NCBI RefSeq assembly: GCF_947568905.1
Contig: NC_079165.1
Location: forward strand, 61,318,001 to 61,382,000
Origin: Ostrea edulis
Taxonomy: Eukaryota
Length of the DNA stretch: 64,000 bases
Direction of reading: 5' to 3'
The notes under the pieces are model-generated. The model worked only from the letters and a program-made list of their open reading frames with translations. It ran no database searches and was not told where the DNA came from. This document shows, in pieces, positions 37,710-58,088 of this stretch (its first letter is position 1; the number at the start of each line of letters is the position of its first letter). Both the position numbers and the translations under genes were made by a program.

Positions 37710-37893
37710 GTTTTCAGTCAATCGGTGGATAGAACCGGTGACACGCAATACCGGAAGTAAAAGAATTCCCAACCCACCATTATTACATGCGCCACCTACC
37801 GAGGAAATCCTATCTTATTTATAAAGCAAATGATCATGTGACTTGACAGAGATAGAGGAGATCCTCTTATCACATTTCGAACTTTTAAAGGCA
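37710..37893. promoter_or_regulatory. Bidirectional promoter UFM1 / secreted-protein gene
   Basis: Divergent ATGs 184 bp apart; ETS-type ccggaagt at 37751-37758; tcatgtga at about 37834. Confidence 0.55.
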
Positions 37894-38077
37894 ATGGAGT
37901 TAAACAGATTACTACTTGTGTTTACTTTATGTTTAATTTCAAGGACCCTTGCTTTTGAAACTAAAAAACTATCTCAACCCCTCCAAAAAGACATTTTAAC
38001 TCTAAAATCAGAGGAACCAGTACGGATACCCAGTGAAACCAGAATCCGACAAGCAGACGAAGAGGAGGGTGAATATG
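37894..38077 (+). CDS. First exon of a secreted protein (signal peptide plus acidic pro-region); downstream exons unresolved
   Basis: MELNRLLLVFTLCLISRTLA-FETKK..RQADEEEGEY G|gtatgt, phase-1 donor. Compatible with phase-1 exons at 38920, 40860-40895, 42788-42853 and 43527. Confidence 0.65.
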
Positions 38078-41000
38078 GTATGTATACTTTGTCACTTACT
38101 AAGGAGGGCGCTTATTTTATCTAATCTACAATGGAAAAGAAGCTATGACTATTCTCCAATTTTTATCAATTATCATTATTTTTTTAATGCCAGGACATGG
38201 ATTGTCTATATAGAATATTTTCATATTATATAATGTTCTTTAAAAAGTCATTAAAATATGACAAATCGAATAAATTTATGTGAATGAAATAGAATATATT
38301 GAAGGAAAACCTTATAGTTAATATGATGTGAAAATCAGGTAGTTTATAAACATTTCTTAAAAACAGGAAATGTAGGCCTACTAAATATTAAATTTATCAG
38401 ATCGTTTTCTATGCATGTAGAAAATCATAATCTAGGGATTTAATAGACTAGTACAGTTTCATGCGTAAATATTTTTTCTGCAACTGATACTTTGAGAAGG
38501 TGTTCAATTAAATAAATATTATAGATATACTTCACGTTGTTTCACTGATTGTAAACTTTCTAATATATAGTGTGCACGCACTGACTATTTACACAATATC
38601 AGAACTCAAAAGTTGGTGTAAGCCGGAGACATTCGTACTTGCACGTTTAATCTATTGCACTGCTGATAGCGGTTCGACTCACTGGGTCAAGGGGTATCTA
38701 AATCTTTGATAGGTTATATACATTGTAATGATATAGTTTTCTGTGTTTTTTCTTTACCCTAATTAAGCACCTCTTCCCTGAATGTGCTGAGAAACTCCTA
38801 CACTGAAAATTGCTTTGTCACTATTCCTAAGCATTTCGATCCAACATTCAATATGTAAATCTAGACAAAGGGGGGAAATAGAAAGCACGTTAATTAGCTT
38901 TAGTATCGTCAATTCACAGGCGACGATTTGAGACATCTCTTATTTTTCCTGAAGTATTCTGTTGCCAATTCTTTCCCATTAAATGTCAAAATAAATAAGT
39001 TGAAAGGAAGAATGTTTTTGGGTAGCACTTATTACGGATGCGCTGTGGGTCTAGGCCTGAGAAGTGCTGGGTCATGTCGAGGTTTTTTGGGCTCTGTCGT
39101 TGTGATGCCGTACCTGGAGCCTGCTGCCTCCATTTACGACAGAACGGGTATCGAATTGCGGGTCTATTGTTCCGGCTAACCCTTGCGGACTTTGCCATTC
39201 ACAAAACTAAATTACATTTACACATTAGATGGATGTGCATACGATATATTGCATTAATCAATTAAAATGATATTATTCAAAGAAATTACAATAACTTGGA
39301 TATAAACAATCGATTTCCTTGCTGTATTTCCGTTTACTTTTTAAAGGTGTAATTGTCCATAAAGAATTTAGTTTTTGGCCAAACTGAATATTTCTGCGTA
39401 TTTAGTTCCTAATAAGCTTATCACACCAGATGCTGCTTTCTCACGATATCGTACAATAGTAATTGTCCTTGTGAGAGTGGGTCCTATTAAAATGACAGAA
39501 GTGGACAAAAAGTTCTAGACATTTTAAGGACACTGTCCCCAGATCCAAGATCTAGATTCGGAGGGTTTTGTTCTCAATAAGTATTCTATAAATATTAATG
39601 TCAAGTTTACTGCCTTGAAAATATGTTTTGAAATATATTGAAATCTTTGTTTTCATTCAAATTATCGTCAATATTATATGTTGTCGTTAATGCCAAATTT
39701 ACGCTCTTGAAAACAAATTTTGAAATATATAGAAAATCGGATTTTCGACTGAGCTACTAAACATAAAAATACTTTTAATTCCACTAAAACGTTAATAAAC
39801 TCCCCAAGGTATGGTTATTTTAAAATCTTTACAAGGAAAGTAAATATGATTGATTCCACTGACATATGGGTGGTATTACCTTTCATTAATTATTTAAACT
39901 TCTCACACTTCAGAAATTCTTAAACACATAATTTGCTTTACGACAAAGTAACATGCAAGACTTGTAATAGAAAGACTTTGACAGAATAATGGATTAAGGG
40001 CGATTTATATGCTTCATTTGGACGGACAGACGGGAGACGCACTTTCTCTCTGGTCTCCATTTTCTAATGAAAGCCGCGGGAAGTCCATTCATAGAACGAA
40101 ATATGTGGAGTAGAAATGCATGAATTAGAGCTTTTATTGTGCTTTCTGTTAACATGCAGATTCAACGAAGGCGTCCATGAGAGTGTCATAGTTTACAAGT
40201 GTTAAAAGAAACAGCCGGATGAAGATGTCAAAATATTCATCCCTCTACAAATATTATTACAAATGATTTAGATTTAAATAACCGTGAACAATATTCTATC
40301 TTTCTGCAAAGTTATATGAATACGTCCTGAAGCTTCTTCAATTAGTTCAAGTGATCCTGTCCATAACTAAAGTGTAAAAATCATTAATTGGAATCCGTCA
40401 CAGAGATGAATGGGGTATAAATCGAGAGCCCCGTCCCCATCGCAGAGTGTGTGCACAGCCCGCTCGTGTCGCCTGCTCGCTGCATGGTAACACAGGATAT
40501 CGTTATTCGCCCATTGTTTTCCTGTAGATAAATAAACATATTGAATTAGAAAGCTAATATTTTGTTTGTTAAGCAAAAATCGTCCGTCTGAAGAGGCACG
40601 ATCGCGGTACCACTACCCAACTGTCGCGATGAAAAGAGACGACCGTCACCCACAGACCTGGGAAACAATGTATTGCTTACGCCGTACCAGCTTTAGATGT
40701 GTTATTAATGAGATTAGAGCGATAGTGTATCGAATTAACAAGTTTCTCAACTTGTAACATCTCCAAACAGCGATTACCCCAGATCTTGTCAGTGATTGGG
40801 CTTATTTACGAGGCAACTATTATGCTGTTTGAATTTTAATTTATGCATGTCGATATCAGAGGGTGATTCGCAACTTAATAACACTTTAAAGCATGGTATG
40901 ATTGTTTGAGGTTATAACTATAACAAGTGTGTGAATTATCTTTAAGAATTGATCTCGCTTTGAGATACTAGAAGACCGAAGACTGTCCAAAAACCATCTG

Positions 41001-42023
41001 CACACTTTGATTGTAAATTTATGGAATATAGTTTACACTGCATGTGCAATGTGCTGTATGGTTGCATGTATTATGTTGAATATCTGCAAGAAGAATCCAG
41101 ATTTATATTCTCGTGTAGTATAATTGTCCGCATGTATTGAAAAGTCTGTGGGAGGAATTCATAAAACGAAACTCGCGTTATTGATCTTAAATTGCATTCT
41201 TTTTTAATTGCATTCTCTTTTATTCTTATTTGAATATATAATATATCAGTCATTACACATTAGTTTGTCCGGAAGCATATTCAATGGTAACATAAATGTA
41301 TAAATTACATTCTAAAAAAAATTCCCACATCTTGGATATTACAAGATCTGCATACCTCAAAGGGAATTTTTATATGCAAAGTATCTCTTTCGTTTCATTC
41401 CACAAATTTTTATTATCAAATTATGCAAATTAAAACTCGATTATGATCTGATATTTCACCTCTTAAAATTTAAAGCTCACAAAATATATATACCAGCACT
41501 TGATGCCCCATTATTTACAGTCTTATCTGTTTTAACATAAACAGTATACGTGTATGGTGTAAACAAAATGAAATATGCGTGTATTTTTGTGGGATTTAAT
41601 TTTTATTCAAAGACATTCAACTTTCATGCAAATATTTCTTATTCTCACCATGTGCATATATAGCGTTGAGAAGTATATGTACATGTATGACATTTGTTGC
41701 AATAAATAAATGAATCAATAATAGCTACTAATTAAAAAAACCAACAACAACAACGAAAATTTTGAATTGTATACATTTTAATCGCGGGGGGTGTTTGTCT
41801 TCCTGCTCGTGTTAGCGCTATCGACGAACTCTGAACTGATAGCAACTCAATGAGATTTCGATCTCCCAACTAACTTGTGTAATAAACTAAACGACATTTA
41901 TTCGATAGATAAATGAATACATGTAACCTTTATGTGACCAGGGGAAGTCATGGTTCAAAATCTATCTATATAAAGAAAACCCACCCGAAAACCATTTACA
42001 GAATAATGCAATGACTTCTACAG

Positions 42024-42541
42024 ATATGCAGTGAGACGATTTAATTTCTTCCCACCGTCCATTGTGCATTACCACTAGAACGAGTCGTGTAATGGGCCAA
42101 ACATAATAGTTCGAATATGATCCCGGATGTCACTTTGTTGGAACATGGGAAAGTAATTGTGTTCCAGTTTTGGGCCCCTTTCATCGTGAGACAATATGAG
42201 ACCATATTGCAAGGATGTCCAGTTGCCATAAAAGTGAATATATTCAGACTGCAAGCTTTAATATCAAATTCATTGAATTTAGCAAAGTCATTCCATACAG
42301 AGTGACGTGCAAAGAAAATCAAACTTCCACTTGTGCATGGCGTACTTAGCTGCGCTTTTGCATGGATATATAATACCGAGGGAACCAACTACGACTTTGG
42401 TCAAAGCGTATCTGTTTTACGTGGAATCCTGGTACTATCTAAACGGAAAAGATGTTCTCCAATGCTTAGGTGTACCGAACCCACACTCGTGCGGCTTATG
42501 GGTGCATGTTAACCAACGGACGGATTCCAACTGCGCTTCTC
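42024..42541 (+). pseudogene. Dead sushi-A and sushi-B exons (cassette copy 1)
   Basis: Alignable to 47401-47904. Cys to TGA, Trp to TAA/TGA, frameshifts, and the sushi-B acceptor mutated to cttccac. Confidence 0.85.
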
Positions 42542-42787
42542 GTACGTGATACAAGTTACTAATCTTGAAGAGCAGTTGTAAAAACTCTTTTTAAAAATTC
42601 TACAGCCTTTAAAGCTTCACTTTGCCAAACTGCAGCATCATGTCAATCTCCCATCACATGCACTTGTATTTCTGATCGTCCATTTTTTAAACATCTGTAG
42701 AATACAGTATCAAAATGGTGCCAGAAAATATGTGTATTCAGAGAAAAGATTTTAACATCTGATGTGACTTATATTATCTGCTTTCAG

Positions 42788-43720
42788 CTACAGTCGATGA
42801 CGTACTTTCACCACCATATTTGACGAGTTTCGGGGCTGAGAGAGAAACAAATGGTATACGATTTTATGATTTTACTGTCAGTACAAATATAACGAGAACG
42901 TTTTTGTGACGTTTTGTTTTACGTAGCAACTTTTATAGCAAAACTCTACTTCAGAGGCTTTTCTTGCATTAATAAAAGTATCCTTGAAGTACGCTGAAAG
43001 TAACAGTTATCGATTCGTTTGTCTTTGTACCGTCATGGATTGTGATTTATCCATTGTAGTCCACTCATTAGCGTCCAATACATGTAGGACTCTAAAGCTT
43101 ATATTCAATTAGTACAGCGTGAATCTAGAGGGTCAATCCAAATTATTCTTCACTAAGATCAATTAATTGGTGTATCTTTATAATCTATGGTGATCTTTAT
43201 GATGTTGGCCTTCGTCCTATGACAAAAAATCGCTATCTAGTGAGATTGATTGATTTTATATTGTTTAACGTCCCACTCGAGAATGTTTCATTTCATATGG
43301 AGATCGACGTCACCATTGCCAGTGAAGGGCTGCAAAATTTAGCCCTATGCTTGGCGCTTACGGCCTTTAAGCAGGGAGGGGTCTTTATCGTGCCATACCT
43401 GCTGTGACACGGGACCTCGGTTTTTGCGATCTCAATCCGAAGGACCGCCCCATTTAGTCGCCTCGTACGACAGTATCTAGTGACAAAGCAATTCCTATCA
43501 TATACCTGTACTGTTTTCTTTTTAAGATTCGGAATCGGAAGCAGAAGACAGTGTATGCTTACAACCAAAAAAGCCAGGACCATGTAAAGCAAGAATGAAG
43601 AGATTCTACTTCAATCCCGCTAACAAAGGCTGTGAAGAATTTTTCTATGGAGGGTGTCAGAAAAACGACAACAATTTCAAGAGTCTTGAGGAGTGCAGAA
43701 ATAAATGTATTGGCAACTGA
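42788..43720 (+). CDS. Linker exon plus intact Kunitz/BPTI terminal exon (copy 1)
   Basis: Exons 42788-42853 and 43527-43720, both entered in phase 1. CLQPKKPGPCKARMKRFYFNPANKGCEEFFYGGCQKNDNNFKSLEECRNKC, six Cys. Confidence 0.8.
43244..43472 (-). mobile_element. SINE copy
   Basis: Reverse complement of 227-464. Confidence 0.8.
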
Positions 43721-44649
43721 GGATGCTGATCTGGATCATAAAGATATTGTCTCCCTCTCACATTTTTGTTTATAATTTCGACATTTTTTGGAAACTCCGA
43801 AATGGGCGTAATTCTGAAATAAGAAAATTTTGTCTTCATAACACTGAGAGGTATATGACTGACAATTTAATGAAGATTATTAAATGCAGTATGAGTTCAC
43901 ATTGAAGAGTTTTAGAAGAAAGATGAAATATATCGTGGGCACAAATTGATTTACCGAAAATTGAAAAATAAATAGCAGACATAAATTTGCAAAATCATAT
44001 TACATATTTTCCTATAGACACAAATTAGGTACCTTTCACGTACAAAAAACAACAACAATACATTGGCATATAATTATTGATATGTTTGGTTCCATGAGGA
44101 CTTTTCATAAAAAATCTAGTTTAAAAGTTTCTTTCAATGCATTTAGTATTCCTAGAATTATGTTTACTGGATTTCCTTAGAAATCGACATATATTTGTGA
44201 TTGTGCAAAAATTCATGCGCTTGCAAGTTATTTAGTCACCCCTATTTCACCAATCGTAGAAGTGTTCATCCAAGTGCACAACAGACACAATTCTAGGCTT
44301 TCCGCGATCTTCTGTTTGCACCCGAGTAGCAAACAATATATAAGGTGTGTGTTTAATAGCTGGATTCCACCATGTGGACTTTGTTTTTTCTTAGTTGATA
44401 TTGTTAAAATTATTGTTATTTGAATTATGAAATAAATATCGAGATACAGAAAGGGTGTTGTGTTCAGCAAATTTATCTCCGTACAGCAGAGTTTTGGATA
44501 GAATGTAATCATTCTTGTTCATTTCTTTTGTTGCACCTGCATAAAAATCTTTGTTGCTATTGGATATAAAATCTTAAAAGTCAATGTACAGATAGGTAAA
44601 ATTTTGAAAATTCGAACGTTGTAAGGATTCTGCATCTAATATTTCTCAA

Positions 44650-45100
44650 CTGTTAGGAATGGTATTTTACAGAAATGTTTAGCTTTTTAGGGGAACGTGT
44701 TCCAGTGATCACGAAGATGTCACTCTCACTCATTTCAAATCATTGCTCTCCTTTGTCATCAATATCTTCTCCATGTTCAATTGACCCGTTACAATGTTAT
44801 ACCCGATGCTATTCTGACTTTTGCATTAAAGTATCCCATTACAATTAAGATGGCATGCTGTGATTGTCTTGTAGATTTTCTAAAAATCTCTTTTTGTCTC
44901 CGTGGGATCAAGTTTATTTTGAAGATGGTTATATATATTTGTAAAATATAACACATAGACCTCTCTCAGACAGGCAATTCATTTATATCAGGGACTTTTT
45001 AGTTTTTAAGTTTTCATCTATACCAATGTATATAATCTCACTGGATGGAACCATTCTTTTCATTAGTCAAATACATGTGCTTACTTTGCAGCTTTCCGGA
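44650..45100 (-). mobile_element. Decayed RTE-type LINE endonuclease remnant
   Basis: Minus-strand ILIVMGYFNAKV..HG..KGEQ..VITGTRSP resembles the APE motif IVMGDFNAKVG..LVITGT.FPH. Confidence 0.45.
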
Positions 45101-46179
45101 GCTGTTTTTGTACTAAAAAGCTTATTCAACTTGAACAACACAAAGCTTATCTTTCCATTTATTGATCTACTTGGATTATTTCGCCCATGATTAATACAGT
45201 TCTTGTATAGAAATACAAGTACTGTCATTTAGAGTGCACAGTGACGTCAGCCGATGGACGACATTCAGTTGACGTTTATCGACAATCATCATGATCAATG
45301 TCGTCTGCATTTGTGTAGCAATTTCAATGTCCATATATTGGTATTCAGTCTCAAAGATACTTGCAAGGATGCAAGTTTGAATAAAGATATGGATATTTTT
45401 GGGCTGGTTTAAACTATATAGTCTAGCCGAGTTAAATTTGATAATACTGATCTACTCCACAATGCGTTTACACTGGTACAAATTTCAAAACCACATACAT
45501 GTACACGTTAATCAACCCGAATACAGTTTAGTGTGCACGTGAAATGGAATGGATACCACCTATCACTATAAAACTTTAACGTAACGTTTCCAGATGTGAT
45601 TAGAAACTATGGACAGGAAGTATGCACCATTGAAATATTGATATATTTTTTGGCATTTAATTCTTTTTAGCATGTTGTGAGGTGGATCAATTTAATCCAC
45701 TTAATCCAGGCTAAGTTGTTCAAGCTAAATTCATTAAGTGTGAACTAATCCCAAGTAATTGGATAGCACATTTGGAATAGGTCAGGTGAGAGAATACCCT
45801 GTTTTGCAGGATCCCACGTCACTAGCATGTATCCTATACGGAGGTACGATCTTATTCTTTATACTGCATGTCCCCTTTCTGGAGTGATAAGAACGGTGTC
45901 AGCCTCTTTTTATATAGTGTATTACCGGTATGTACTGGTTCATTCGTGCACGAGGGCATTTTACTACACATGTATTGGTGTTTACAGATCTAGACCGTTT
46001 CTTGGATTTGGTCAGTTGCTGGTAAATCGCTGTTCAGTCAATTAACAAATATTTTATACACTTATTCAAAATGCTGTCAGAAATGAATGGTTTTTAAATG
46101 AGCATGTTGAAAAAAAAAATAACCATTCTACATATACTCTACGTTCTTATTTTGTAAATTAATCTCATCTTATTACACT

Positions 46180-46538
46180 TGTGACGGTCAAACATGGTTC
46201 GATCACCGGTGGGCAGAAAGCTCAGTTGGTAGAGCACCTGACTAGAGATTCAGGGTGCCCGGGTTCGAATCTTGGTCTGGTTCGTTGCATTTTCTCCCTT
46301 CCTGTTACATCTGTTGCCGTAAATAAAGTAGAATAGCTTCTGGGACTGACAGATGAAAATGCCTGCCAGGGGATAAAGATCCTGGGTTGAAATCTTCAAT
46401 AGGTGAAGAGTTTAAAGGGAGGAATGTGACGGTCAGACGGGTTCGATCGCTCAGTCGATAGATCACCCAAATAGAGATTCAGGGATCCAGGGTTCGAATC
46501 CTGGTCTGCTCCGTTGCATTTTCTCACTTCCTTTTACA
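46180..46538 (+). mobile_element. TRIM (miniature LTR retroelement) with tRNA-like LTRs, Helenus-type
   Basis: LTR1 46180-46309 and LTR2 46425-46538 (TG..CA); PBS-like tctgttgccgt; PPT aaagggaggaa; A and B boxes in the LTRs; 4-bp TSD cact on both sides. Confidence 0.85.
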
Positions 46539-47400
46539 CACTGTTAAAATTTGAATTATCATAACATATAAACATCGTCACTTGATTTCCTTTCGTTTTC
46601 AGTATTAGATTTTACATTAGATAAAATTAAAATGAAATACATTGTACATTTTTGTAAATGAAACAAAAGTACTCAGTTAACTTTACATATACCTAATCAG
46701 TTATTACTCTTCTTTTAGCATTTTGAAATCAAGTGCTAGATGAACTTATAGCTATTCAGATATCAATGGTAAGTTAAAATGTAAACATTTTAATCGCATG
46801 GGCGTGTTTTAATTTCCCGTGTTGGTGTTATCAGTACACTCTGCACCGATGGGTTTATATCAAAGTCAATGAGCTCTCGATTTGGTAAACCTCTTAAACG
46901 ACATTTACGTACAAGGCCTCATTAAAGAAATTGATTCAATGAATTGCAAATAGCAATGGTTCAAAACCCGAGACAGTCAATTAGAAATATTAACTACTTC
47001 CTGTGGAACAAGTGAGTCTAACATTTATTTAAGATTGTTAAAAAAAATCTCTCGTGTTTCATAATTGGCCTTGCGAAGTGTCTTAGGGAGGAAAATCATA
47101 TCATGAAAGGTGGTGTAATTCTTTGAAATTTTATTCTTATTTCTGAACATCAAGATGGATACCGATGTGGCTTTTAAATCAATGTTAAATCCATATCTGG
47201 ATTAATTTTCATCCATAATTCAAATTTTGCACACATTGATATCATCTACCTCTTAGAATTGACCACCTGGTTTCTAAGGCTCAAATGTTCATTCACCGCC
47301 AACAGAACGTGGCGGATGACGACCGACGGGCTCATATTGTAATTAGTCACTCATGCACTAAATATTCTACTTACTGATTATGGTAATGACTTATATGCAG

Positions 47401-48293
47401 ACACACAATGTGGGGATCTACCCGTCGTGCATTGCGGTCACTACACAGGCACGAGTCACGCGATGGGCCAAACTTGGAAGCTACAATGTGATCCCGGATG
47501 TCGATTAGTTGGATCAGGAGATATTACTTGTTTGGCAGTTCCGGATCCATTTCACCATGTGGCAATATGGGATCATATGCAAGGGATGTCCAAATGCGAA
47601 AAATGTAAATATCTCTCTATTATATGTATCTTATGAATACCTTCTGAAATCTTAAGATCGGGTTAGATTAGAGTTACGTACAGTAAAAATCAAACTTCAG
47701 CTTGTTGTGGCGTCCCACCTGCGCCTGCGCATGGATATACTGTAGGAAAAAACTATGACGTGTATCAAAACGTAACCATTAAATGCGATCCTGGCTACCA
47801 TCTAAACGGAAGTGATACTCTCCAATGCTTACCTGTAGCCAACCCTAAGGTTTGCGGTGTTTGGGTGTATATTCCTGAATGGACGGATACTAAATGCCTA
47901 CCTCGTGCGTGATAGAAGTTACTTTTTTTAAAAGGAAAGTAAAGAGCAATTTAAAAACTTTTAAGCATTGTTTTCCAATTTCCTACATATTTGATTATTT
48001 CTTTCAAATCAAAAAGCATCCCAATAACCTCGAACTACTGCAGGTGTATTTCAAGTCGCTCGTTATGTACTATGCAACTACTAGCACATTTTAAAAAAAA
48101 ACAACAACAAAGCATTGCTGTATATAGTATTTAGATTACCCATCACTAAAATTTTGTTTGCTAGAAAATATAACTTCAATATCTAGAAAAACAATTTAAT
48201 ATCACCATATTTATATTATCTTTTCAGTTACTGTCGACTCAAAACGTTCACCATCACATTTGATGAGCTCTGAGGTTGAAAGGAAAACAACAG
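47401..48293 (+). CDS. Sushi-A, sushi-B and linker exons (cassette copy 2); no Kunitz exon found
   Basis: Exons 47401-47604, 47701-47904, 48228-48293 (204/204/66 nt, all phase 1-1, open). CGDLP..CDPGC..ITC..W..C and CCGVPPAPAHG..CDPGYHLNGS..C..W..C. Confidence 0.85.
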
Positions 48294-49925
48294 GTAGCCG
48301 ATATTTTCGTAGAAAAATAACAAAGCAGTTACATTAACTGAATCTTTAATTGAACAGAACAGAGATGATCAGAAGGGTTGATAGTATCACTTACTATGGC
48401 AAGTTCGTGAACAGTATGCCGGTGTGAGGCGTTGCGGTTCATATCATCATGCATTTTCAAAACTGAAATTTATTTTCTACATCTACATTCTACTTTCATT
48501 TCTGTCAGAGTTCCCAGCCAATCAAACAAGCGCACTATATTTATCAAGATTCATACGCGTATTGTTGACAACTGCAGTGCATTCAATAGGATATGGTTAT
48601 CATTACAATTTGTAAACATATCTAAGACAAACACACTGGAAATGTAAATGTTTGAGTGATATCTATCTATCTATCATTTAAGTGATATCACTTATTCGAC
48701 TCATTGAAAGAGGAACATGAAATATCACCTACTCGCGTCGTTGACGTGATACATGTTTCGCAAATCTGCGTCATTACTTAATCGTTTAATTGGTTGTATA
48801 ACTAAACTGAAATACCAAAACGGTGCCTCATATTGACGACAGTGAATCTATTACAAATTTTACAAGTTTGATACTTTCTGTCGTTCTCCTATTTAACATA
48901 AGTTTGGTGTAACCCAGGTGGCAATCGACCACGTCATGCATTCAGATTGCAGAAAATCCTTCTGGATATATCTGAACTAGATAATCACTTTAAACTGTAT
49001 GTAATTCCTTCAGTACTTTAGCATTTTCCGTAAGATTTCAGTAAAATTTTAAGATTTTAAAGGAACTTTAACTTGCTTGTTACGGTCATAAGAAGGGGTT
49101 GACTGGGGCGATTCGAGTGACCCACAAAGACAGAGGTCGCGTGCTTGTGCAGAATGCTGAGCATAGATAATTTTGCAATTCTTCATCAGTGACGTTATCG
49201 TTTTAAGAAATATTCCTTATTCCTAATAAAAAGAAGAAAAACAGAGATTTGTCTTAAAAACTCTGTACATGAAACTGTTGATGACGAAATTAATCCAACA
49301 AGTCAAGTAAGTATTACTTGCACGACTTGTTTGAATAAATATTGTCATCAGTTGCGTTATATACATCTGTATGGCGCATATAAATATTAGGTATGAGCTT
49401 CAAAATGATAACATGATTACAAAATTTCCCCATCCCTTTACTAAATATGAAATCTGATCGTTATACATTGAATACCTAAAGTATGAGCTTGTTATTCTCA
49501 CCGTGGGATGTCGCAGCCTATCAATATTGTATGATTCATTCATTCATTGTATATTGTTTAACGTCCCACTGGAGATTTTTTTATTTATATGGAGACGTCA
49601 CCGGCAATTTGAATTTCATAGTCATAACGAAAAGAGGTAGAGAATAATTATTGACTATACTCGATCTACGCTTGGATAATTTACAAGGATGGTACTAGTA
49701 ACAATGAAAGTTTGTGTTATATTCTCGACAAAATGGCATGGAGAGTGGCTTTTAAATTACATTAACAGGAAACACGCAGGAGAAAAGCATTTAATTAAAT
49801 GGTGTCATCAATTTTAGAGTGAAAGTGTCCATGTGCTTCCTGTGTACTGATAAAATGCTCCCTATTGCAAATATTTGTCTCCCTTAATTCAAAATGAACT
49901 CATTGAAATTTATTGAAATCAATAA

Positions 49926-51182
49926 GAAACAAGAGATGTTTGTAAACCATGTATGCCCCCCATGGTGCAAAATTGAAAAGGGTTATACACATGCATTATT
50001 AATTGATAGTAGTATCACCAATTCGAAATATTGAGCAGACAATATCTTCCAATGTCAGGGGTGGATTGACCATGTGACCGAAAAATCAATATGGGTCATC
50101 TACTCCTTATGCTGTACCAGTGTACCAAAATTGGTGTCAATCAAGCAAATAATTCTTAGAATATAGGAGACAATATATTACTTTGTCCAGTTTAACCATT
50201 GACCTTTGACCATGTGACCTCAAAATCAATAAAGGTCATCTTCTCTTGAAGATGTACCAGTGTACCAAATTAGATGTCTGTCAAGCAAAGGTTCTCAAAT
50301 GTCCAGTTTGACCCTTGACCTTTTACCATGTGATCTCAAAATCAATAGGGGTCATCTTCTCCTGAAGATGTACCAGTGTACCAAGTTTGATGTCTGTCAA
50401 GCAAAGTGTTCTCAAGATATTGTGCGGACAGTATATTCCCATGTCCAGTTTGACCCTTGACCTTTAATCATGTAACCTCGAAATCAATAGGGGCCATCTT
50501 CTCCTGAAGATGTACCAGTGTATCAAGTTTGATGTCTGTCAAGAAAATGGTTCTCAAGATATTGAGCGGATAGCATATTCTTTTGTCCAGTACCTTTGAC
50601 TATGTGACCTCAAAATCAATAGAGGTTATTTTCTCCTGAAGATGTACCAGTATACCAAGTTTGATGTCCATCAAGCAAAGGGTTCTCAAGATATTGAGCG
50701 GACAGTATATTCCTATGTTCAGTTTGACCCTTGACCTTTGAACATGTGACCTCAAAATCAATAGGGGTAATCTTCTCCTATAGATGTACCAGTGTACTAA
50801 TTTTGATGTCTGTCAGGCAAAAGGTTCTCTAGACATTGAGTGGTCAGTCTATTCCTATGTCCAGTTTTACCTTTGACCATGTAACCTCAAAATCGACAGG
50901 GGTCATCTACTGTTTGGGATGTACCAGTGTACCAAGTTTGATGTCTGTCAAGCAAAGGGTTCTCAAGATATTAAACGGACAGTGTCTTCCTATATCCGGA
51001 GTAGATTGACCCTTGACCTTTAAACCTGAAAAACAATAGGGATCCTCTTCTACTCATAACCAACTCACATATGAAATATCATTACGATGAAGTGAATGGT
51101 TTTCAAGATATTGAGCAGACAACATGTGGCCTACCGACCGATCGACCGACAGGTGCAGACCCTCTTATTTAAAGGGGGATAA
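49926..51182 (-). mobile_element. HINE-type element with about 7.5 tandem units of 116-142 bp
   Basis: gatgtaccagtgtacca motif at about 50111, 50251, 50367, 50509, 50641, 50783, 50918; gaccgatcgaccgac microrepeat and ccctctt..aaggggg hairpin end. Confidence 0.75.
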
Positions 51183-51239
51183 CAAGATTGCTAGAGGTTA
51201 ATAAAGCTGATTGTTCAGTGCAGGAAAGTGCACCAATTC

Positions 51240-51655
51240 TGTCACTGTAAAGCAGCTGTCCATGTGTCATCGTATGTGAACAATTTAATAACTTGGGAGT
51301 GAGTAACTTTTTAAAGAATTGTTTGTGGGTTTCTCAAAAATTAAAAGATCATATGGTGAAACTGTTGTAAACACGATTATCCAGGAGTTGACTGATTAAG
51401 GAACCGTGACGCAAAACATGAGAGATCAAGGATATGGCGATGCTGATGAATCTTCAGGTGTTCAGACCACAATAAGACAAGCTGTTCCTTTTGCAGAATA
51501 TGTTCATTGTGATGTACACTAACTTAACCTAGCTGTTCTGAGAGCATTTCGAATCCCTGAAAATTTTAGCATAATGAATGTTATTCAACAGATAACAATT
51601 TCATCTTTCCATTCTCCTAAGCATGACTTGGCTTTCGGAAAATTTCTGGAAAAGG
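51240..51655 (+). mobile_element. Decayed hAT (ZMYM1-like) transposase fragment
   Basis: QLSMC..ELFVGF..MRDQGY..GVQTTIRQAVPFAEYVHCDVH*LNL..SPKH, with stops. Confidence 0.6.
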
Positions 51656-51716
51656 TCAGATAAAAAAAACCCACCAAAATGCAGGACTGAAGAAAGATCA
51701 CGCTAATGTGTGTTTT

Positions 51717-52806
51717 CTATGGCAAGTCCTTTTACTATTTATTCGAAAAATGAAATATCTCTTTAGATTAAAGAGATATCTCTTATCTTAAGGAGATATA
51801 TCTTTAAAATGAGATATATATCTCAATCTTAAGAGATATTTCTCTAAAAAAGAGATATCTCTTTCACGTAGAGAGATATCTCGTTTACTTTTAGAGATAT
51901 ATCTTACACTTTGAGAGATATCTCTTTTACTTTGAGAGATATCTCCTTCACTTAAAGAGATATATCTCTAAGAATTCCTAGAGAGATATCTCTCAAAGTA
52001 TAAGAGAGATCTCTTTAATGTTGAAAAAGAGATATCTCTCAAGCAGAAAGAGATATCTTTTTCCAATATTTTTTATTAGTTTGAATACTCCCTTAACTGG
52101 AAACCGACCAAATCAAATCTTAGCATGATGGCTGTTATCCCGGGGGAAGATTTTGCGTTTACTGCATGTAAAGTGTATATAGGTAACAAAAAACAAAGAC
52201 AATAAATTGATAAAATTTGTGAGCAAAACTAGATTTAACCCCTCGGTAACTTGATAATGTTACCCCAACCACCTCTTCAACCTTTTTCGCCAGTTTTACA
52301 CTAGAAGTATTTTGATTGGTTAAAAAATAGGGTTACATCATATTAATGGCGATGCAATAGGGAGAAGTCATTATGATCACCAGGGGAAATTTAAGTTAAA
52401 GAGATATCTCTTATTGAAAATTTAAAGAGATATCTCTCTAACTTAAAGAGATATCTCTTTTTACATTGATAAAGAGATATCTCTTTACGCTAGAGAGATA
52501 TCTCTTTCTCTTTGAGAGATATCTATCTAGTTTTAAGAGATATCTCTCAAAGAGAAAGAGATATCTTTCTAGCGTAAAGAGATATCTCTTTTGTTTAAAG
52601 AGATATCTCTTTTGTTTAAAGAGATATCTCTTTTGGTTAAAGAGCTCTTCTGGTTAAAGAGATATCTCCCTAACGTAAAAAGATATCTCTTTAACTTTTA
52701 GAGATATATCTACAACCAATAGAGATATCTCTCTAGTGTAGAGATATCACTCTTATCTAAAGAGATATATTATTTTACGAATAAATAGTAAAATGGCTTG
52801 CCATAG
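51717..52806. mobile_element. Foldback-like element with long TIRs and agagatatctct arrays
   Basis: Ends ctatggcaagtccttttactatt.. / ..aatagtaaaatggcttgccatag; TTTT on both flanks; both arms filled with palindromic repeats around a unique core of about 300 bp. Confidence 0.85.
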
Positions 52807-53240
52807 TTTTCACATGGTTCAGCAGTGGTAACACTTTGAATCTATTCAAGTCTGCCTTCACTGTTATACTTGAAGCGCTAAATCATCTAGATGGCGACAA
52901 AGACAACAAAACAAGACCTCGGTCTCTTTCAACGCAGACTTTCGGATTTGTTGTTGATTTCGCAATGGAACATCTACTCTATACGTTGTCTATCAACAAT
53001 TCTACATAATCAGAGCATATCGTCAGAATCATACAGTTATTTCTAGTTTCAGGCAAATTTAAAAAAAAATGAAGAAGATTGAGATAAACTGTTTACCAAT
53101 ACTTTTATTAGTTGGTATCAAACCCAGTGTTCATAGAGGTGCTATTGAAATATAAAGGAATCGGGCGAATATTCCTGCTCAGACACTCTCGGAATACTGG
53201 TAGGGGGATTATTTTGCTCCCTGTATTTGATAAGTCTATG

Positions 53241-53363
53241 ATTCCTCCTAGGTACCTGATCCCACCTCTAGTATATCCAGGGGTCCGTATTTGCCCAACT
53301 CTCTGTTTTGTATTGCTTATAGGAGTTATGAGATTGATCACTGTTCGTTATCTTCACCTTTCA
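53241..53363 (+). mobile_element. Penelope-like 3' repeat copy
   Basis: Matches 7454-7635 and 61905-62068. Confidence 0.65.
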
Positions 53364-54302
53364 TGGAGGTACGATCTGAAATGATTTTTTATTACATCAA
53401 ATATTTATGAATCGTTCCCTTTCTGGAGAGAATAAAAGTGATGTCAATATCTTTTATACATTGCTGCATACTAATATTACATGTGTGTACCGGTTTATTC
53501 TTGTACGATAGCATGTATTAGTGTTTACAAACCGTTTCTTGGATGCTATTGTTATTGTAAATCAATATTCAGTCAATAAACAAACGTCTTTTTTATTTAT
53601 TGAAAATGCTATCAGAAATGAATGTTATAAACGATAACACCCCACCCACCCCAAAAAAAAACCACACGTTAGTTCGTTGAAAATTTAAAAAGGACAACAC
53701 TTCACGTTCATATCATGCAAGTTAAGTTGCACTAAATAAATTCGAAAATTCTTAGCACACACATTCAAGAACTTGTTGTCCTTTGATATTCAGTTTTATT
53801 AGTTTTACCATGAACAATATAACTACATTCGTATTTGATGTAAACAAAATAAAGTTAAAGAGCGTTTTATAATGAATTTTACAATGAAGCAAACACGCCC
53901 AACTCTTTACCATATGTACATGTATTACTCTTGTTTTAGAATTTGAAATTAAAATTTTTGTTTTAGATAATCTTATGATAAACGAAGCTAGCCATAGTAA
54001 GAGCTTACCTTTTTGTGTATCTATTTCAAGAGTTTATCACCGACATTCAAACGTCATAAGCTCTACGTAAAGTGTCACAAATGTATGGTACCCAGGGTGT
54101 TAGCAGTGAGGACTGACGCCTGTCGCGACTCTGTTTTTAAATCCGAAAGACCCGTGACCAGGGTGCCTATTGATAATACACAAGCTACCACTAGTACAAT
54201 GTGAAATCCATGACCTCTCTCTGGGTTATTTTTCATTTACAAACTAAGTTTTGTAGTGAATCATTTACTAAATATACATGTACCATTTACTGATTATTGC
54301 AG

Positions 54303-55883
54303 ACATACAATGTGGGGATCTACCCGTCGTGCATTGCGGTCACTACACAGGCACGAGTCACGCGATGGGCCAAACTTGGAAGCTACAATGTGATCCCGGA
54401 TGTTACTTAGTTGGATCAGGAGACATTACTTGTTTGGCAGTTCCGGATCCATTTCACCATGTGGCAATATGGGACCATACGCAAGGAGTTTCAAAATGCG
54501 AACAATGTAAATATATTTATACGGTTTCTGACGTTTTAAGATCAAGTTTACGAACCAATATCATACAGACTTACATAAAATCAAACTCGAACTTCCAGCT
54601 TGTTGTGGCGTCCCACCTGCGCCTGCGCATGGATACACAGTAGGAAAAAACTTTGACGTGTTTCAAAATGTAACCGTTAAATGCGATCCTGGCTATTATT
54701 TAAACGGAAGTGATATTCTCCAATGCTTACCTGTGCCCAACCCAAAGGCTTGCGGTGTTTGGGTGTACGTTACTCAATGGACGGACTCCAACTGCGTTCC
54801 TCGTACGTAGTACAAAAGCGATTTGAAAACTTTTAAGCCGTGTGGTTCGATTTATAGCATTCTATCAACCTTTAAATCCTGTAAATTAAAGTATTTGAGG
54901 CCGATCTAGAAAATGATCTAGAAAATGATAAAAATTCAGTATTCTGAAAATCAATTTCAGTATAATCATATACTTGTATTATTTATCTCTGTTCTCAGTT
55001 ACTGGTGACGCGAAACGTTCACAACCATATTTGATGGACACGGGTGTCGAACAGAAAAGCACAGGTAGACCATATTCCCGTAAGAAAATAACAAAACACT
55101 TACTTTAACTGAAACTTTTTAAATTGATCAGTACAAAGATTATCCGAAGGTTGTATATTGCAACTTGATATAGAAGTCATGTAAGATATATCAGTTAATC
55201 GTTTGAATATCACTTCCTCCTTGATGTGATATCGCTTAAACAAAGCTGTGATATCACTTAATCGTTTAAATGATAATAGCACTAAATGTAAATTATAAGT
55301 ATTCGAAACAGCACCTCATGAAAACGTTCAGCTATAAAATCAATGTACAAATTCAATGTTTCTGTTATTCTCCTGGTAACTAATGGTTGTTCTAAGTCAT
55401 TCAAATTCAGCCACAACCATACAGAAAATCTCTAGATGTACTGGAATTGGATATTCACCTTTAAAATATTCATATTTCCTTTAGTGTTTTTACATTTCTT
55501 TAAGGTGTTGAGCAAAGTTTGCAAGGAAAAATCCTGTAAACGTTTCCAGACAAACTCCTATAAGTAGAACTTGACAAAGTCCCGCAAGAAATTTACTTCT
55601 CAAGAGACCGATTGCGGTAGCCTAGTGGAATGAGATTACCAAACCCGCGGATGTGTAATCCGAACGCAGTTTATTCAAGAATGATCATAGGAATAAATGC
55701 CTAGGTGTTACGTGACTGGCTAATATCAAGAGTGAAATTGTTTGGAATTGGAAGAACTAGTATATAAGTTTAAATTAATTGTCGGGAGGAAAAATTATCG
55801 CATAAAAATCGAGAGAAAAATGATAGCGGAAATTACCATGGTGTTTAAAATGAAGGATGTAATTCATTGCAGATTCTTATGTG

Positions 55884-55921
<38 letters not shown>

Positions 55922-56467
55922 AGAAGTAAAAATATGACCTATAAAAGCAACGGTGCCCTATATAATTATTGTCGGTTTTTATTAGCGTTTGGAATGAACT
56001 TTCAAAAGTTGGTAATCATTTGTCTAAAATTAACATAGTTGATTAGTGAGAGGGCCAAAGGTTAATATTGAGGTCTATGGGCAACCTCTGCACTCTTTTC
56101 GCTAGTAAAGACGCTCACTTCGCAACTTGGAGGTTACGGGTTCCAGTCATTGTTTGGGTTTTTGGGGGGGGGATCTTGGTATTTTCAGGATGATTTTTAA
56201 ATTTAATTGTAAAACATTATACACATATAGCATTTAAATTATTTGAAATACCACACATCCATGTTTTTCTCTTTAAAAGATTTGGAAGCAGAAGACGACA
56301 TATGCTTGCAACCAAAGAATACAGGTCCGTGTAAAGCAAGAATGAAACGATTCTACTTCAATTCCGTGAAGAAGATCTGTGAAGAGTTTATCTACGGGGG
56401 ATGTAAGAAAAACGACAACAATTTCAAGAGTCTTGAAGAGTGCAAAAACAAATGCATTGGCAACTGA
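54303..56467 (+). CDS. Sushi-A, sushi-B, linker and Kunitz exons (cassette copy 3, complete); 5' end unresolved
   Basis: Exons 54303-54506, 54599-54802, 54999-55064, 56280-56467, all joined in phase 1. Kunitz CLQPKNTGPCKARMKRFYFNSVKKICEEFIYGGC..C..C; AATAAA at 56485. Candidate signal exon at 53069-53114 (MKKIEINCLPILLLV). Confidence 0.88.
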
Positions 56468-57480
56468 CTACGTTGATCTGGACTAATAAAAGTGTTATTT
56501 TCTTTTATTTTATTTTTTTTCTAGAATTCTCTTAATTGGGTGTGACTTCCTTTCTAAATTAACCTACATGTATAGCCCGATGAAGTACATGCATCTCTTT
56601 TGGCTGTAGTTCAAGTTCACGTTGAGGTTTTATTTAGCAATATACAGGAAGCGTGTTGTGTGAAATATCTTTTCTAAGTGTTATTGTCTGTAAGGATTTG
56701 GACACTTGTACAAGAAATATGGCACTTATGACCACATATTTTGTTACAACTTCATAAAGTGATTGCACCTGGTGCTAGAAACAATATCTTTCCACAACTC
56801 AGTTGCCTTGGCTCTGTATAGAAAAGTTAAAAAGATGTAGGTCATTATTTATCCAATCACAAACCCCTCGGGTTTTGTTTGTCTTGTCAATATCAATTTT
56901 GAGTCTTTTATTTATATCAGTCAAAAACACGAGACACTTGTTTTTACAAGTAAATTGTTAATAAATAAAAATAAATGGGGAAATCACATTATATCTAATG
57001 ATATAAAGGATGGTGAAGTCAAGACTAGAAAATTGATAGACAATGGAAAACAAAATTAAATTTCGGTATAAGTGTTAATAGGTCAAACATATGGAGCACT
57101 AGTAAAGCTACCCATTACAACAGGATTAATATTACAGTTTCAGGTAAGTTATCTAGAACACTATTATTCAATAATAATTCTTAAAGCTACTGAGTTCAGT
57201 TACAAAGACACTTTAGACACGACTACACCCCCCCCCCCCTCCTTCCCCCTCAGGCAATGCAATGTTCATAGCAAAGTGGAAAAATCGTCTTCATTACACT
57301 TCAATATTCCTTTAACCAACCTTCGGTGGATTTGGTTGAATGAAAAGATAAGAAAGTTGTTTGTCACCCCTCTTTTGCAAGGCAAAAAGGTCGTTATCGT
57401 GTCAGCACCTCAATGTCAGCCGACAAAACTCCAACGTTTGGATAAGAGCGATGCATCTTACAATATGTGACGTCTCAATT

Positions 57481-57806: not shown

Positions 57807-58088
57807 CAGTACCCCATGCTTGTCGTAAAAGGCGACTAAATAGAGCGGTTCTTCGGATGAGACCGCAAAAACCGAGATCCCATATCACAACAGGTGTGGC
57901 ATGATAAAGAACCCTTCCTGCTCAATGGCCATAAGCACCGAGCATAGGTCTAAATTTTGCACCTCTTCACTGGCAATGATGATGTCTCCATATGAGTAAA
58001 TCATTCTTGAGAGGGACGTTAAACAATCTATTTATCTATCTATAGATATATCTATCTATCTGTCTATCTATAGCTATATCTATCTACT
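57807..58088 (+). mobile_element. 5'-truncated SINE with (tatc)n tail
   Basis: Matches 227-464. Confidence 0.8.

What the first reader, a model, noticed from the sequence alone, without database searches (positions are those of the whole stretch)
42024..56467. Triplicated sushi-sushi-linker-Kunitz cassette showing complementary domain loss
Seen: three homologous cassettes with matching exon layout (204/204/66 nt in the intact copies 2 and 3; 66-nt linker in all three) and homologous intron sequence. Copy 1 has several stops and a dead acceptor in both sushi exons but clean linker and Kunitz exons. Copy 2 has intact sushi exons and no Kunitz exon; the interval holds only transposons. Copy 3 has both. 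All junctions are phase 1, so the exons can be freely combined. Inference: an ancestral sushi2-Kunitz protein split into a Kunitz-only secreted inhibitor (possibly using the 37894 signal exon) and a sushi-only form, or copies 2+3 form one sushi4-Kunitz chain. I do not recognise this architecture as a named gene; an extracellular defence or shell-matrix protease-control system is a hypothesis.
Basis: partly seen in the sequence, partly recalled or inferred. Interest (0 to 1): 0.72.

Follow-up and report, generated by a model that had tools for sequence, protein, structure and literature searches.

The report
Oyster sushi-Kunitz inhibitor gene, two endings
The three repeated cassettes are real, but they form one flat-oyster gene already in RefSeq, which makes either a short secreted Kunitz protease inhibitor or a longer one carrying up to four sushi modules.

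Summary
Window 42024-56467 carries three homologous sushiA-sushiB-linker(-Kunitz) cassettes with phase-1 exons. Copy 1 has dead sushi exons but open linker and Kunitz exons. Copy 2 has no Kunitz exon. Copy 3 is complete.

It is not an unrecognised system. The window is Ostrea edulis, and RefSeq annotates the whole span as one gene, LOC125678592, with ten protein isoforms. X1-X9 run signal exon, A2, (B2), L2, A3, (B3), (L3), K3, giving 303-444 aa. X10 (147 aa) runs signal exon, L1, K1.

A spliced 453-nt contig in an RNA-like public run joins 38077 to 42788 and 42853 to 43527. It skips the dead sushi exons, which confirms the short form.

K1 and K3 are under strong purifying selection (dN/dS 0.12, p = 3e-7). 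So are A2/A3 and B2/B3 (about 0.3).

The signal exon and this sushi type occur only here in the genome. Short signal-linker-Kunitz mRNAs exist in at least three other oyster taxa. Gastropods have 1-5 sushi modules plus a C-terminal Kunitz domain.

Best reading: nested tandem duplications gave one promoter two alternative 3' modules. No sushi-only product is supported. Function is inferred: a secreted inhibitor of trypsin-like proteases (P1 Lys). Interest is modest.

The parts
37853..38077 (+). First exon: 5' UTR (at least from 37853), ATG at 37894, signal peptide and acidic region (61 codons + 1 base, phase-1 donor gtatgt). A TATA-like 'tataaag' lies about 30 nt upstream of 37853.
   Evidence: Sequence. 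The N-terminus of all ten RefSeq isoforms matches it. The X1 contig starts at 37853. The exon is unique in the genome.
42024..42227 (+). A1: dead sushi-A pseudo-exon in intron 1. It has 4 in-frame stops and indels; its AG and GT dinucleotides are kept.
   Evidence: It is 72% identical to A2/A3, close to the intron level. Depth in RNA-like run X1 is zero.
42331..42540 (+). B1: dead sushi-B pseudo-exon with frameshifting indels and an acceptor changed from CAG to CAC.
   Evidence: It is 71-75% identical to B2/B3. Depth in X1 is zero.
42788..42853 (+). L1: 66-nt linker exon, open, phase 1-1. Used in the short isoform.
   Evidence: The X1 contig joins 38077 to it and then on to K1. It is present in P0176.
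43527..43720 (+). K1: terminal Kunitz exon with stop codon. The 3' UTR runs to at least about 44246, with AATAAA at 43967 and 44431. P1 is Lys (GPCKA).
   Evidence: Pfam 73.2 bits. X1 contigs 1 and 6 cover it. dN/dS against K3 is 0.12. Poly(A) signals.
47401..47604 (+). A2: sushi-A exon, 204 nt, phase 1-1.
   Evidence: Present in RefSeq X1-X9.
47701..47904 (+). B2: sushi-B exon, 204 nt. A cassette exon, skipped in X3, X5, X8 and X9.
48228..48293 (+). L2: 66-nt linker exon that joins to A3.
54303..54506 (+). A3: sushi-A exon, 204 nt.
   Evidence: The AlphaFold model (pLDDT 83.5) matches solved sushi/CCP domains with TM 0.72-0.80.
54599..54802 (+). B3: sushi-B exon, 204 nt. A cassette exon, skipped in X4, X6, X7, X8 and X9.
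54999..55079 (+). L3: 66-nt linker exon (54999-55064) with an alternative donor 15 nt downstream that adds GRPYS. The exon is skipped in X7.
56280..56467 (+). K3: terminal Kunitz exon with stop codon. AATAAA at 56485 and 56960. P1 is Lys.
   Evidence: Pfam 76.1 bits.. Closest solved relative is the first Kunitz domain of TFPI.
45969..46089 (+). Unique intronic patch, homologous only to 53512-53634. It is a remnant showing that the copy 2/3 duplication included upstream intron.
   Evidence: 76% identity. One search finds only these two places in the genome.

Best explanation
Window 37853-56467 (+ strand) is one Ostrea edulis gene, RefSeq LOC125678592.

It has one promoter and one signal-peptide exon. 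Nested tandem duplications created two mutually exclusive 3' modules.

- Proximal route: the donor at 38077 splices to L1 (42788), then to K1 (43527), and the transcript is polyadenylated after K1. The product is a 147-aa precursor of a bare, secreted, single-domain Kunitz inhibitor. The A1 and B1 exons of that old cassette are dead and are skipped.
- Distal route: the same donor bypasses copy 1 and splices to A2 (47401). The transcript runs A2-B2-L2-A3-B3-L3-K3. Because every exon is phase 1-1, B2, B3 and L3 can be skipped. The products carry two to four sushi/CCP modules followed by a Kunitz domain.

K1 and K3 share the same reactive loop (GPCKARMKRFYFN, P1 Lys). I therefore infer that both product classes inhibit trypsin-like serine proteases, and that they differ in whether sushi modules tether or target the inhibitor.

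Shown here: exon anatomy, the spliced short mRNA, the annotated isoforms, and purifying selection. Inferred: secretion, protease specificity, the role of the sushi modules, and RNA support for the long forms (taken from RefSeq models only).
For: - Ten RefSeq isoforms are built exactly from the window's exon peptides.
- Run X1 has a 453-nt contig at depth 227 that joins 37853-38077, 42789-42852 and 43526-43688 across GT..AG introns. It has zero depth over A1/B1, and the joints are absent from DNA runs X2, X3 and X5.
- K1 vs K3: pS 0.51, pN 0.09, dN/dS 0.12, Fisher p = 3e-7. K1/K3 are 84% identical at the nucleotide level, against about 70-75% for the pseudo-exons and introns of copy 1.
- A2/A3 dN/dS is 0.34 and B2/B3 is 0.30 (pooled p = 0.001). 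These exons are 94% and 88% identical, against 77-80% for the introns.
- The signal exon has one copy in the genome, and the A and B sushi types occur only at this locus.
- Collinear short mRNAs of 147-150 aa occur in other oyster taxa.
- Kunitz: Pfam 73-76 bits and the six-Cys pattern; TFPI Kunitz-1 is the best solved match.
- Sushi: four Cys plus Trp are invariant across 13 domains, and the fold matches IL-15Ra, CD55, CR2 and Crry sushi domains.
Against: - I could not lay reads on the 38077>47401 or 48293>54303 junctions. The cap was one call of at most 6 kb, so the long isoforms rest on RefSeq models, selection and splice-site integrity.
- Run X1 is only guessed to be RNA. It is labelled as a different organism from the DNA runs, and its contig differs at 13 of 453 positions, so it may be another population or a sister species.
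- No long form from any other oyster turned up in the 204-649 aa search.
- No biochemical or expression data exist.
Confidence: 0.85

Rival explanations
1. The short mRNA is the only real product. The long sushi isoforms X1-X9 would then be prediction artefacts, or belong to a separate gene whose first exon is unrecognised.
For: - RNA evidence obtained here covers only signal-L1-K1.
- Related oysters yielded only short mRNAs.
Against: - A2/A3 and B2/B3 are under purifying selection and are far more conserved than their introns.
- All splice sites and phases are intact.
- There is no second signal exon anywhere in the genome.
- The nine combinatorial isoforms look like skipping of phase-compatible exons.
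- X1 holds about 5% of the sampled words of 47380-56500. That is roughly what about 1.1 kb of exons at about 97% identity would give; this is my estimate, not a test.
Confidence: 0.08
2. One reading: an ancestral sushi2-Kunitz gene split into separate Kunitz-only and sushi-only genes by complementary domain loss.
For: Copy 1 lost its sushi exons and keeps a working Kunitz exon, while copy 2 has sushi exons and no Kunitz exon.
Against: - No stop-bearing terminal exon or poly(A) signal follows L2.
- L2 is spliced to A3 in all nine long isoforms.
- Both product classes share one first exon.
- Copy 2/3 homology ends 90 nt after L but extends upstream of A, so copy 2 probably never had a Kunitz exon.
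Confidence: 0.04
3. Copies 1 and 2 are simple decaying duplicates and only copy 3 functions.
For: A1 and B1 are clearly dead.
Against: - K1 has dN/dS 0.12 and is found in a spliced mRNA at high depth.
- L1 and K1 form RefSeq isoform X10.
- A2 and B2 are open, conserved and used in the RefSeq models.
Confidence: 0.03

Closest known systems
RefSeq gene LOC125678592 of Ostrea edulis (XP_048773112.2 to XP_056010667.1, plus isoform X10)
   Same: It is the same locus. All ten predicted proteins are exact concatenations of the window's exons.
   Different: RefSeq gives no function and names the isoforms inconsistently (SVEP1-like, CSMD1-like, CSMD2-like, TFPI-like, uncharacterized). It does not record the dead A1/B1 exons, the duplication history or the selection pattern.
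Vertebrate tissue factor pathway inhibitor (TFPI alpha/beta)
   Same: It is a secreted Kunitz inhibitor. K3 aligns best to TFPI Kunitz-1, with the same GPCKA..MKRF.FN loop and CEEFIYGGC core. From my own knowledge, not tested here: TFPI also produces isoforms through alternative 3' terminal exons.
   Different: TFPI has two or three tandem Kunitz domains and no sushi modules. Here there is one Kunitz domain per product, preceded by 0-4 sushi modules. There is no evidence of a role in coagulation.
Gastropod sushi(n)-Kunitz proteins: Haliotis cracherodii 233 aa, Gigantopelta aegis 237 aa, Littorina saxatilis 455 aa, Batillaria attramentaria 637 aa
   Same: The layout is the same: signal peptide, acidic 'QDAEE' stretch, 1-5 extended sushi domains carrying the C-PVP-P...W motif, a linker, and a C-terminal Kunitz domain. 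The motif CLAVPDPFHHVAIW is identical in Littorina and in Ostrea A-type domains.
   Different: All are uncharacterized. Each has a single 3' end as predicted. No Kunitz-only isoform or nested dead cassette is known for them.
Complement-control-protein (CCP/sushi) repeat proteins (CR1, CD55, CD46, IL-15Ralpha)
   Same: The A3 model superposes on their sushi domains at TM 0.72-0.80. The four-Cys plus Trp core is present.
   Different: The oyster domains carry two extra cysteines each and a longer C3-C4 loop. Pfam aligns only positions 1-45 of the 56-position model. No complement-related partner is known.

Membership tests
Kunitz/BPTI (PF00014) | Profile score above the gathering cut-off | tested here: met
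   K1 scores 73.2 bits and K3 76.1 bits against a cut-off of 21.
Kunitz/BPTI (PF00014) | Six cysteines spaced C-x8-C-x15-C-x7-C-x12-C-x3-C | tested here: met
   The pattern matched both K1 and K3.
Kunitz/BPTI (PF00014) | Canonical reactive loop with a basic P1 residue after the second Cys | tested here: met
   Both domains read GPC-K-A, as in BPTI and TFPI Kunitz-1. Which residue is P1 is assigned from established knowledge of BPTI.
Kunitz/BPTI (PF00014) | Measured inhibition of a serine protease | not testable with these tools
   Needs recombinant protein and enzyme assays.
Sushi/CCP/SCR (PF00084) | Profile score above the gathering cut-off | tested here: met
   B2 scores 33.8 and B3 31.6 bits. 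A2 (21.1) and A3 (20.7) are only at the cut-off of 20.7.
Sushi/CCP/SCR (PF00084) | Four conserved Cys and the conserved Trp | tested here: met
   C3, C29, C43, C65 and W56 are invariant across 13 oyster and gastropod domains.
Sushi/CCP/SCR (PF00084) | Beta-sandwich CCP fold | tested here: met
   The AF2 model of A3 has pLDDT 83.5 and six strands. The top Foldseek hits are IL-15Ra, CD55, Crry, CR2, CD46 and C4BP sushi domains at TM 0.72-0.80.
TFPI (the RefSeq name of isoform X10) | Two or three tandem Kunitz domains | tested here: not met
   X10 has a single Kunitz domain. 'TFPI-like' reflects best-hit similarity only.
CSMD / SVEP1 (the RefSeq names of X1-X3, X5, X7) | CUB, VWA, EGF or pentraxin domains alongside sushi repeats | tested here: not met
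   The precomputed Pfam domains of all long isoforms are PF00014 and PF00084 only.

The most novel reading that the evidence does not exclude
A whole A-B-L-K cassette was duplicated in tandem behind the shared first exon and ended up inside what is now intron 1. There it was kept only as an alternative last-exon module. One promoter can therefore switch between a free Kunitz inhibitor and a sushi-tethered inhibitor with the same reactive loop. The sushi modules would target the inhibitor to a surface such as shell matrix, a pathogen or a complement-like factor. This would be subfunctionalisation at isoform level within a mollusc-wide but unnamed sushi-Kunitz family.
Probability: 0.3. Interest if true: 0.45.

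Novelty: new member of a known kind. Interest (0 to 1): 0.3.

Why it matters
The locus is a clean example of how tandem exon-block duplication inside a gene can produce an alternative 3' end and combinatorial domain isoforms rather than new genes.

It also brings to light a conserved, unstudied mollusc family of sushi-Kunitz secreted proteins. Protease inhibitors are recurrent candidates in oyster disease tolerance and in shell-matrix proteomes, so the two product classes are reasonable targets for expression and inhibition assays in O. edulis.

The gene and its isoforms are already in RefSeq, so this refines annotation and evolution. It is not a discovery of a new system.

Tried and rejected
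- **Single-exon search of the 1.84-billion-protein library (B3 as query).** Giant multi-sushi proteins dominated the results. Only P0021 was informative.
- **Word search with the B3 exon (37-119 aa range).** No candidates were found. This says nothing about related species.
- **Look-up of the 41-aa in-exon ORF of a relative's Kunitz exon, to get its genomic contig.** Not on record.
- **Genomic contig L016 of a related oyster.** It is collinear with intron 1 at about 80% identity but ends roughly 30 nt before the position of A1. I could not tell whether relatives keep sushi exons.
- **P0157 and P0158 (207 and 212 aa).** They looked like C-terminally extended variants, but they are TGA-read-as-Trp artefacts of 147-aa products.
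- **Literature searches.** Searches for the gene id, for O. edulis plus Kunitz, for sushi plus Kunitz plus shell matrix, and for TFPI plus oyster found no description of a sushi-Kunitz protein.
- **Exon joining.** All spliced proteins used were returned by the database tools, and the dN/dS work was done exon by exon.
Full report
**1. Observation**

The window is eukaryotic, about 33-38% GC with no N runs. I searched it with the copy-3 peptides by tblastn.
- Sushi A is found at 54290-54499, 47391-47597 and, with stops, 42074-42226.
- Sushi B is found at 54586-54789, 47691-47891 and 42334-42528.
- Kunitz is found at 56261-56467 and 43532-43720.
- Nothing else in the 64 kb matches at E<0.04.

Reading the junctions gives these exons.
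- Signal exon: 37894-38077.
- Copy 1: A1 42024-42227, B1 about 42331-42540, L1 42788-42853, K1 43527-43720.
- Copy 2: A2 47401-47604, B2 47701-47904, L2 48228-48293.
- Copy 3: A3 54303-54506, B3 54599-54802, L3 54999-55064, K3 56280-56467.

The intact sushi exons are 204 nt and the linkers 66 nt. Every internal junction is phase 1, and both Kunitz exons end in a stop codon.

A1 has four in-frame stops and indels. B1 has frameshifts and a CAG>CAC acceptor.

Pfam confirms Sushi and Kunitz_BPTI. DNA runs from two further studies cover copy 1 with only scattered SNPs, so the decay is not an assembly error.

**2. What it is**

A single-exon search of the representative protein library returned P0021. 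Its sequence is signal exon, A2, B2, L2, A3, L3, K3.

Cluster look-ups and word searches identify it as Ostrea edulis LOC125678592 and give ten isoforms. I mapped exact exon peptides onto them.

| Isoform | Length (aa) | Exons |
|---|---|---|
| X1 | 444 | sig-A2-B2-L2-A3-B3-L3-K3, with the 15-nt alternative L3 donor (adds GRPYS) |
| X2 | 439 | sig-A2-B2-L2-A3-B3-L3-K3 |
| X3 | 376 | sig-A2-L2-A3-B3-L3-K3, with GRPYS |
| X4 | 376 | sig-A2-B2-L2-A3-L3-K3, with GRPYS |
| X5 | 371 | sig-A2-L2-A3-B3-L3-K3 |
| X6 | 371 | sig-A2-B2-L2-A3-L3-K3 |
| X7 | 349 | sig-A2-B2-L2-A3-K3 |
| X8 | 308 | sig-A2-L2-A3-L3-K3, with GRPYS |
| X9 | 303 | sig-A2-L2-A3-L3-K3 |
| X10 | 147 | sig-L1-K1 (named 'TFPI-like') |

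Copy 1 therefore lies inside intron 1 of the long forms and supplies the alternative terminal exons of the short form. The signal exon has a single copy in the 895-Mb genome, and the A and B sushi types occur only at this locus.

All spliced sequences came from the databases.

**3. RNA evidence**

Run X1 is guessed to be RNA and carries a different organism code from the DNA holders.
- One 453-nt contig at depth 227 lies on 37853-38077, 42789-42852 and 43526-43688.
- It crosses two GT..AG introns.
- Depth is zero across A1/B1 and across almost all of the intron.
- A second contig continues the 3' UTR to about 44246.
- DNA runs X2, X3 and X5 cover the stretch continuously and lack the joints.

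This is a spliced signal-L1-K1 mRNA.

The contig differs from the window at 13 of 453 positions. Within K1 the reactive loop changes: P1' Ala>Leu and Met>Thr. X1 may therefore be a divergent population or a sister taxon.

I could not test the long-form junctions, because the cap was one call of at most 6 kb. X1 held 5% of the sampled words of 47380-56500. That is about what 1.1 kb of exons at 97% identity would give. This is my arithmetic only.

**4. Selection**

All comparisons were made exon by exon with the Nei-Gojobori method.

| Pair | pS | pN | dN/dS | Significance |
|---|---|---|---|---|
| K1 vs K3 | 0.51 | 0.09 | 0.12 | Fisher p = 3e-7 |
| A2 vs A3 | 0.119 | 0.043 | 0.34 | pooled with B2/B3, p = 0.001 |
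| B2 vs B3 | 0.244 | 0.083 | 0.30 | pooled with A2/A3, p = 0.001 |

Nucleotide identities tell the same story.

| Comparison | Identity |
|---|---|
| K1 vs K3 | 84% |
| A1 vs A2/A3 (pseudo-exon) | 72% |
| B1 vs B2/B3 (pseudo-exon) | 71-75% |
| Copy-1 intron vs copies 2/3 | about 70% |
| A2 vs A3 | 94% |
| B2 vs B3 | 88% |
| Introns, copy 2 vs copy 3 | 77-80% |
| L2 vs L3 | 73% |

The linkers evolve at about the intron rate but stay open. Copies 1 and 2 are thus not simple decaying duplicates.

**5. History (inferred)**

Copy 1 is the outgroup to copies 2 and 3, so a whole A-B-L-K cassette was duplicated first. In the upstream copy only L and K were retained.

Later, a segment containing A-B-L was duplicated internally.
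- Copy 2/3 homology runs from a unique patch 0.7-1.3 kb upstream of A (45969-46089 vs 53512-53634, the only two places in the genome) to about 90 nt past L.
- Nothing in 48384-54287 resembles the L3-K3 intron or K3 itself.
- Copy 2 therefore probably never had a Kunitz exon.

That interval now holds a 1.25-kb element with more than 40 genomic copies and tandem arrays.

In a Kunitz tree, K1 and K3 of O. edulis are sisters (support 96/99) relative to other oysters' Kunitz domains. This points to a lineage-specific duplication or to gene conversion. I cannot separate the two.

**6. Relatives**

Collinear 1.0-1.1-kb mRNAs encode signal-linker-Kunitz products of 147-150 aa in at least three other oyster taxa. 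They are 82-98% identical to one another and about 81% identical to O. edulis in the first exon.

Gastropods encode the same layout with 1 (Haliotis, Gigantopelta), 3 (Littorina) or 5 (Batillaria) sushi domains before a C-terminal Kunitz domain. Littorina and Ostrea share the motif CLAVPDPFHHVAIW. The sushi-Kunitz architecture is therefore old in molluscs, and the bare Kunitz form is derived.

**7. Mechanism and function**

Shown:
- one first exon and two alternative terminal modules;
- cassette-exon skipping among phase-compatible exons.

Inferred:
- Secretion, from an N-terminal hydrophobic signal that ends around TLA/FE.
- Inhibition of trypsin-like serine proteases. The P1 residue is Lys in a BPTI/TFPI-like loop that is identical in K1 and K3, and the best solved match is TFPI Kunitz-1.
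- A targeting or binding role for the sushi modules. The A3 model has a CCP fold, with TM 0.72-0.80 to IL-15Ra, CD55, CR2 and Crry.

No paper mentions the gene or a sushi-Kunitz protein. The shell-matrix or defence role therefore stays a hypothesis.

**8. Verdict**

The gene and all ten isoforms are already in RefSeq.

- the dead exons in intron 1;
- the evidence for selection;
- the duplication order;
- the spliced-contig confirmation of the short form;
- the link to a mollusc-wide family.

Interest is modest.

Noticed in passing
window 43244-43472 (also inverted at 57821-57995; fragment at 49538-49595): A very high-copy short repeat sits in the L1-K1 intron. Summed contig depth in the DNA runs jumps from about 30-100 to between 10^5 and 10^6, with many variant joints. 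It looks like a MITE or SINE.
   Followed up: partly
window 49900-51190: A 1.25-kb dispersed element has more than 40 copies at 82-87% identity across the genome. It contains a 132-142-nt tandem array at 50184-51025.
   Followed up: partly
window 51755-52058 and 52396-52768: Two arrays of a 21-nt partly palindromic unit (AGAGATATCTCT core) form long inverted self-matches.
   Followed up: no
window 43589-43596 (K1 reactive loop) in run X1: The expressed K1 sequence in run X1 differs from the window at P1' (Ala>Leu, two bases) and at the next-but-one residue (Met>Thr). This suggests variation in the reactive loop between populations or sister taxa.
   Followed up: partly
L029 and L030 (proteins P0157, P0158): Two database proteins of 207 and 212 aa are the 147-aa short product read through its TGA stop as Trp. 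This is a gene-calling artefact on assembled transcripts.
   Followed up: yes
RefSeq names of LOC125678592 isoforms: Isoforms of this one gene are variously named SVEP1-like, CSMD1-like, CSMD2-like, TFPI-like and uncharacterized. None of the defining extra domains of those families is present.
   Followed up: yes
window 55888-55919: A run of 32 A lies in the L3-K3 intron. It may be the tail of a retroposed element.
   Followed up: no
I did not examine it.
   Followed up: no
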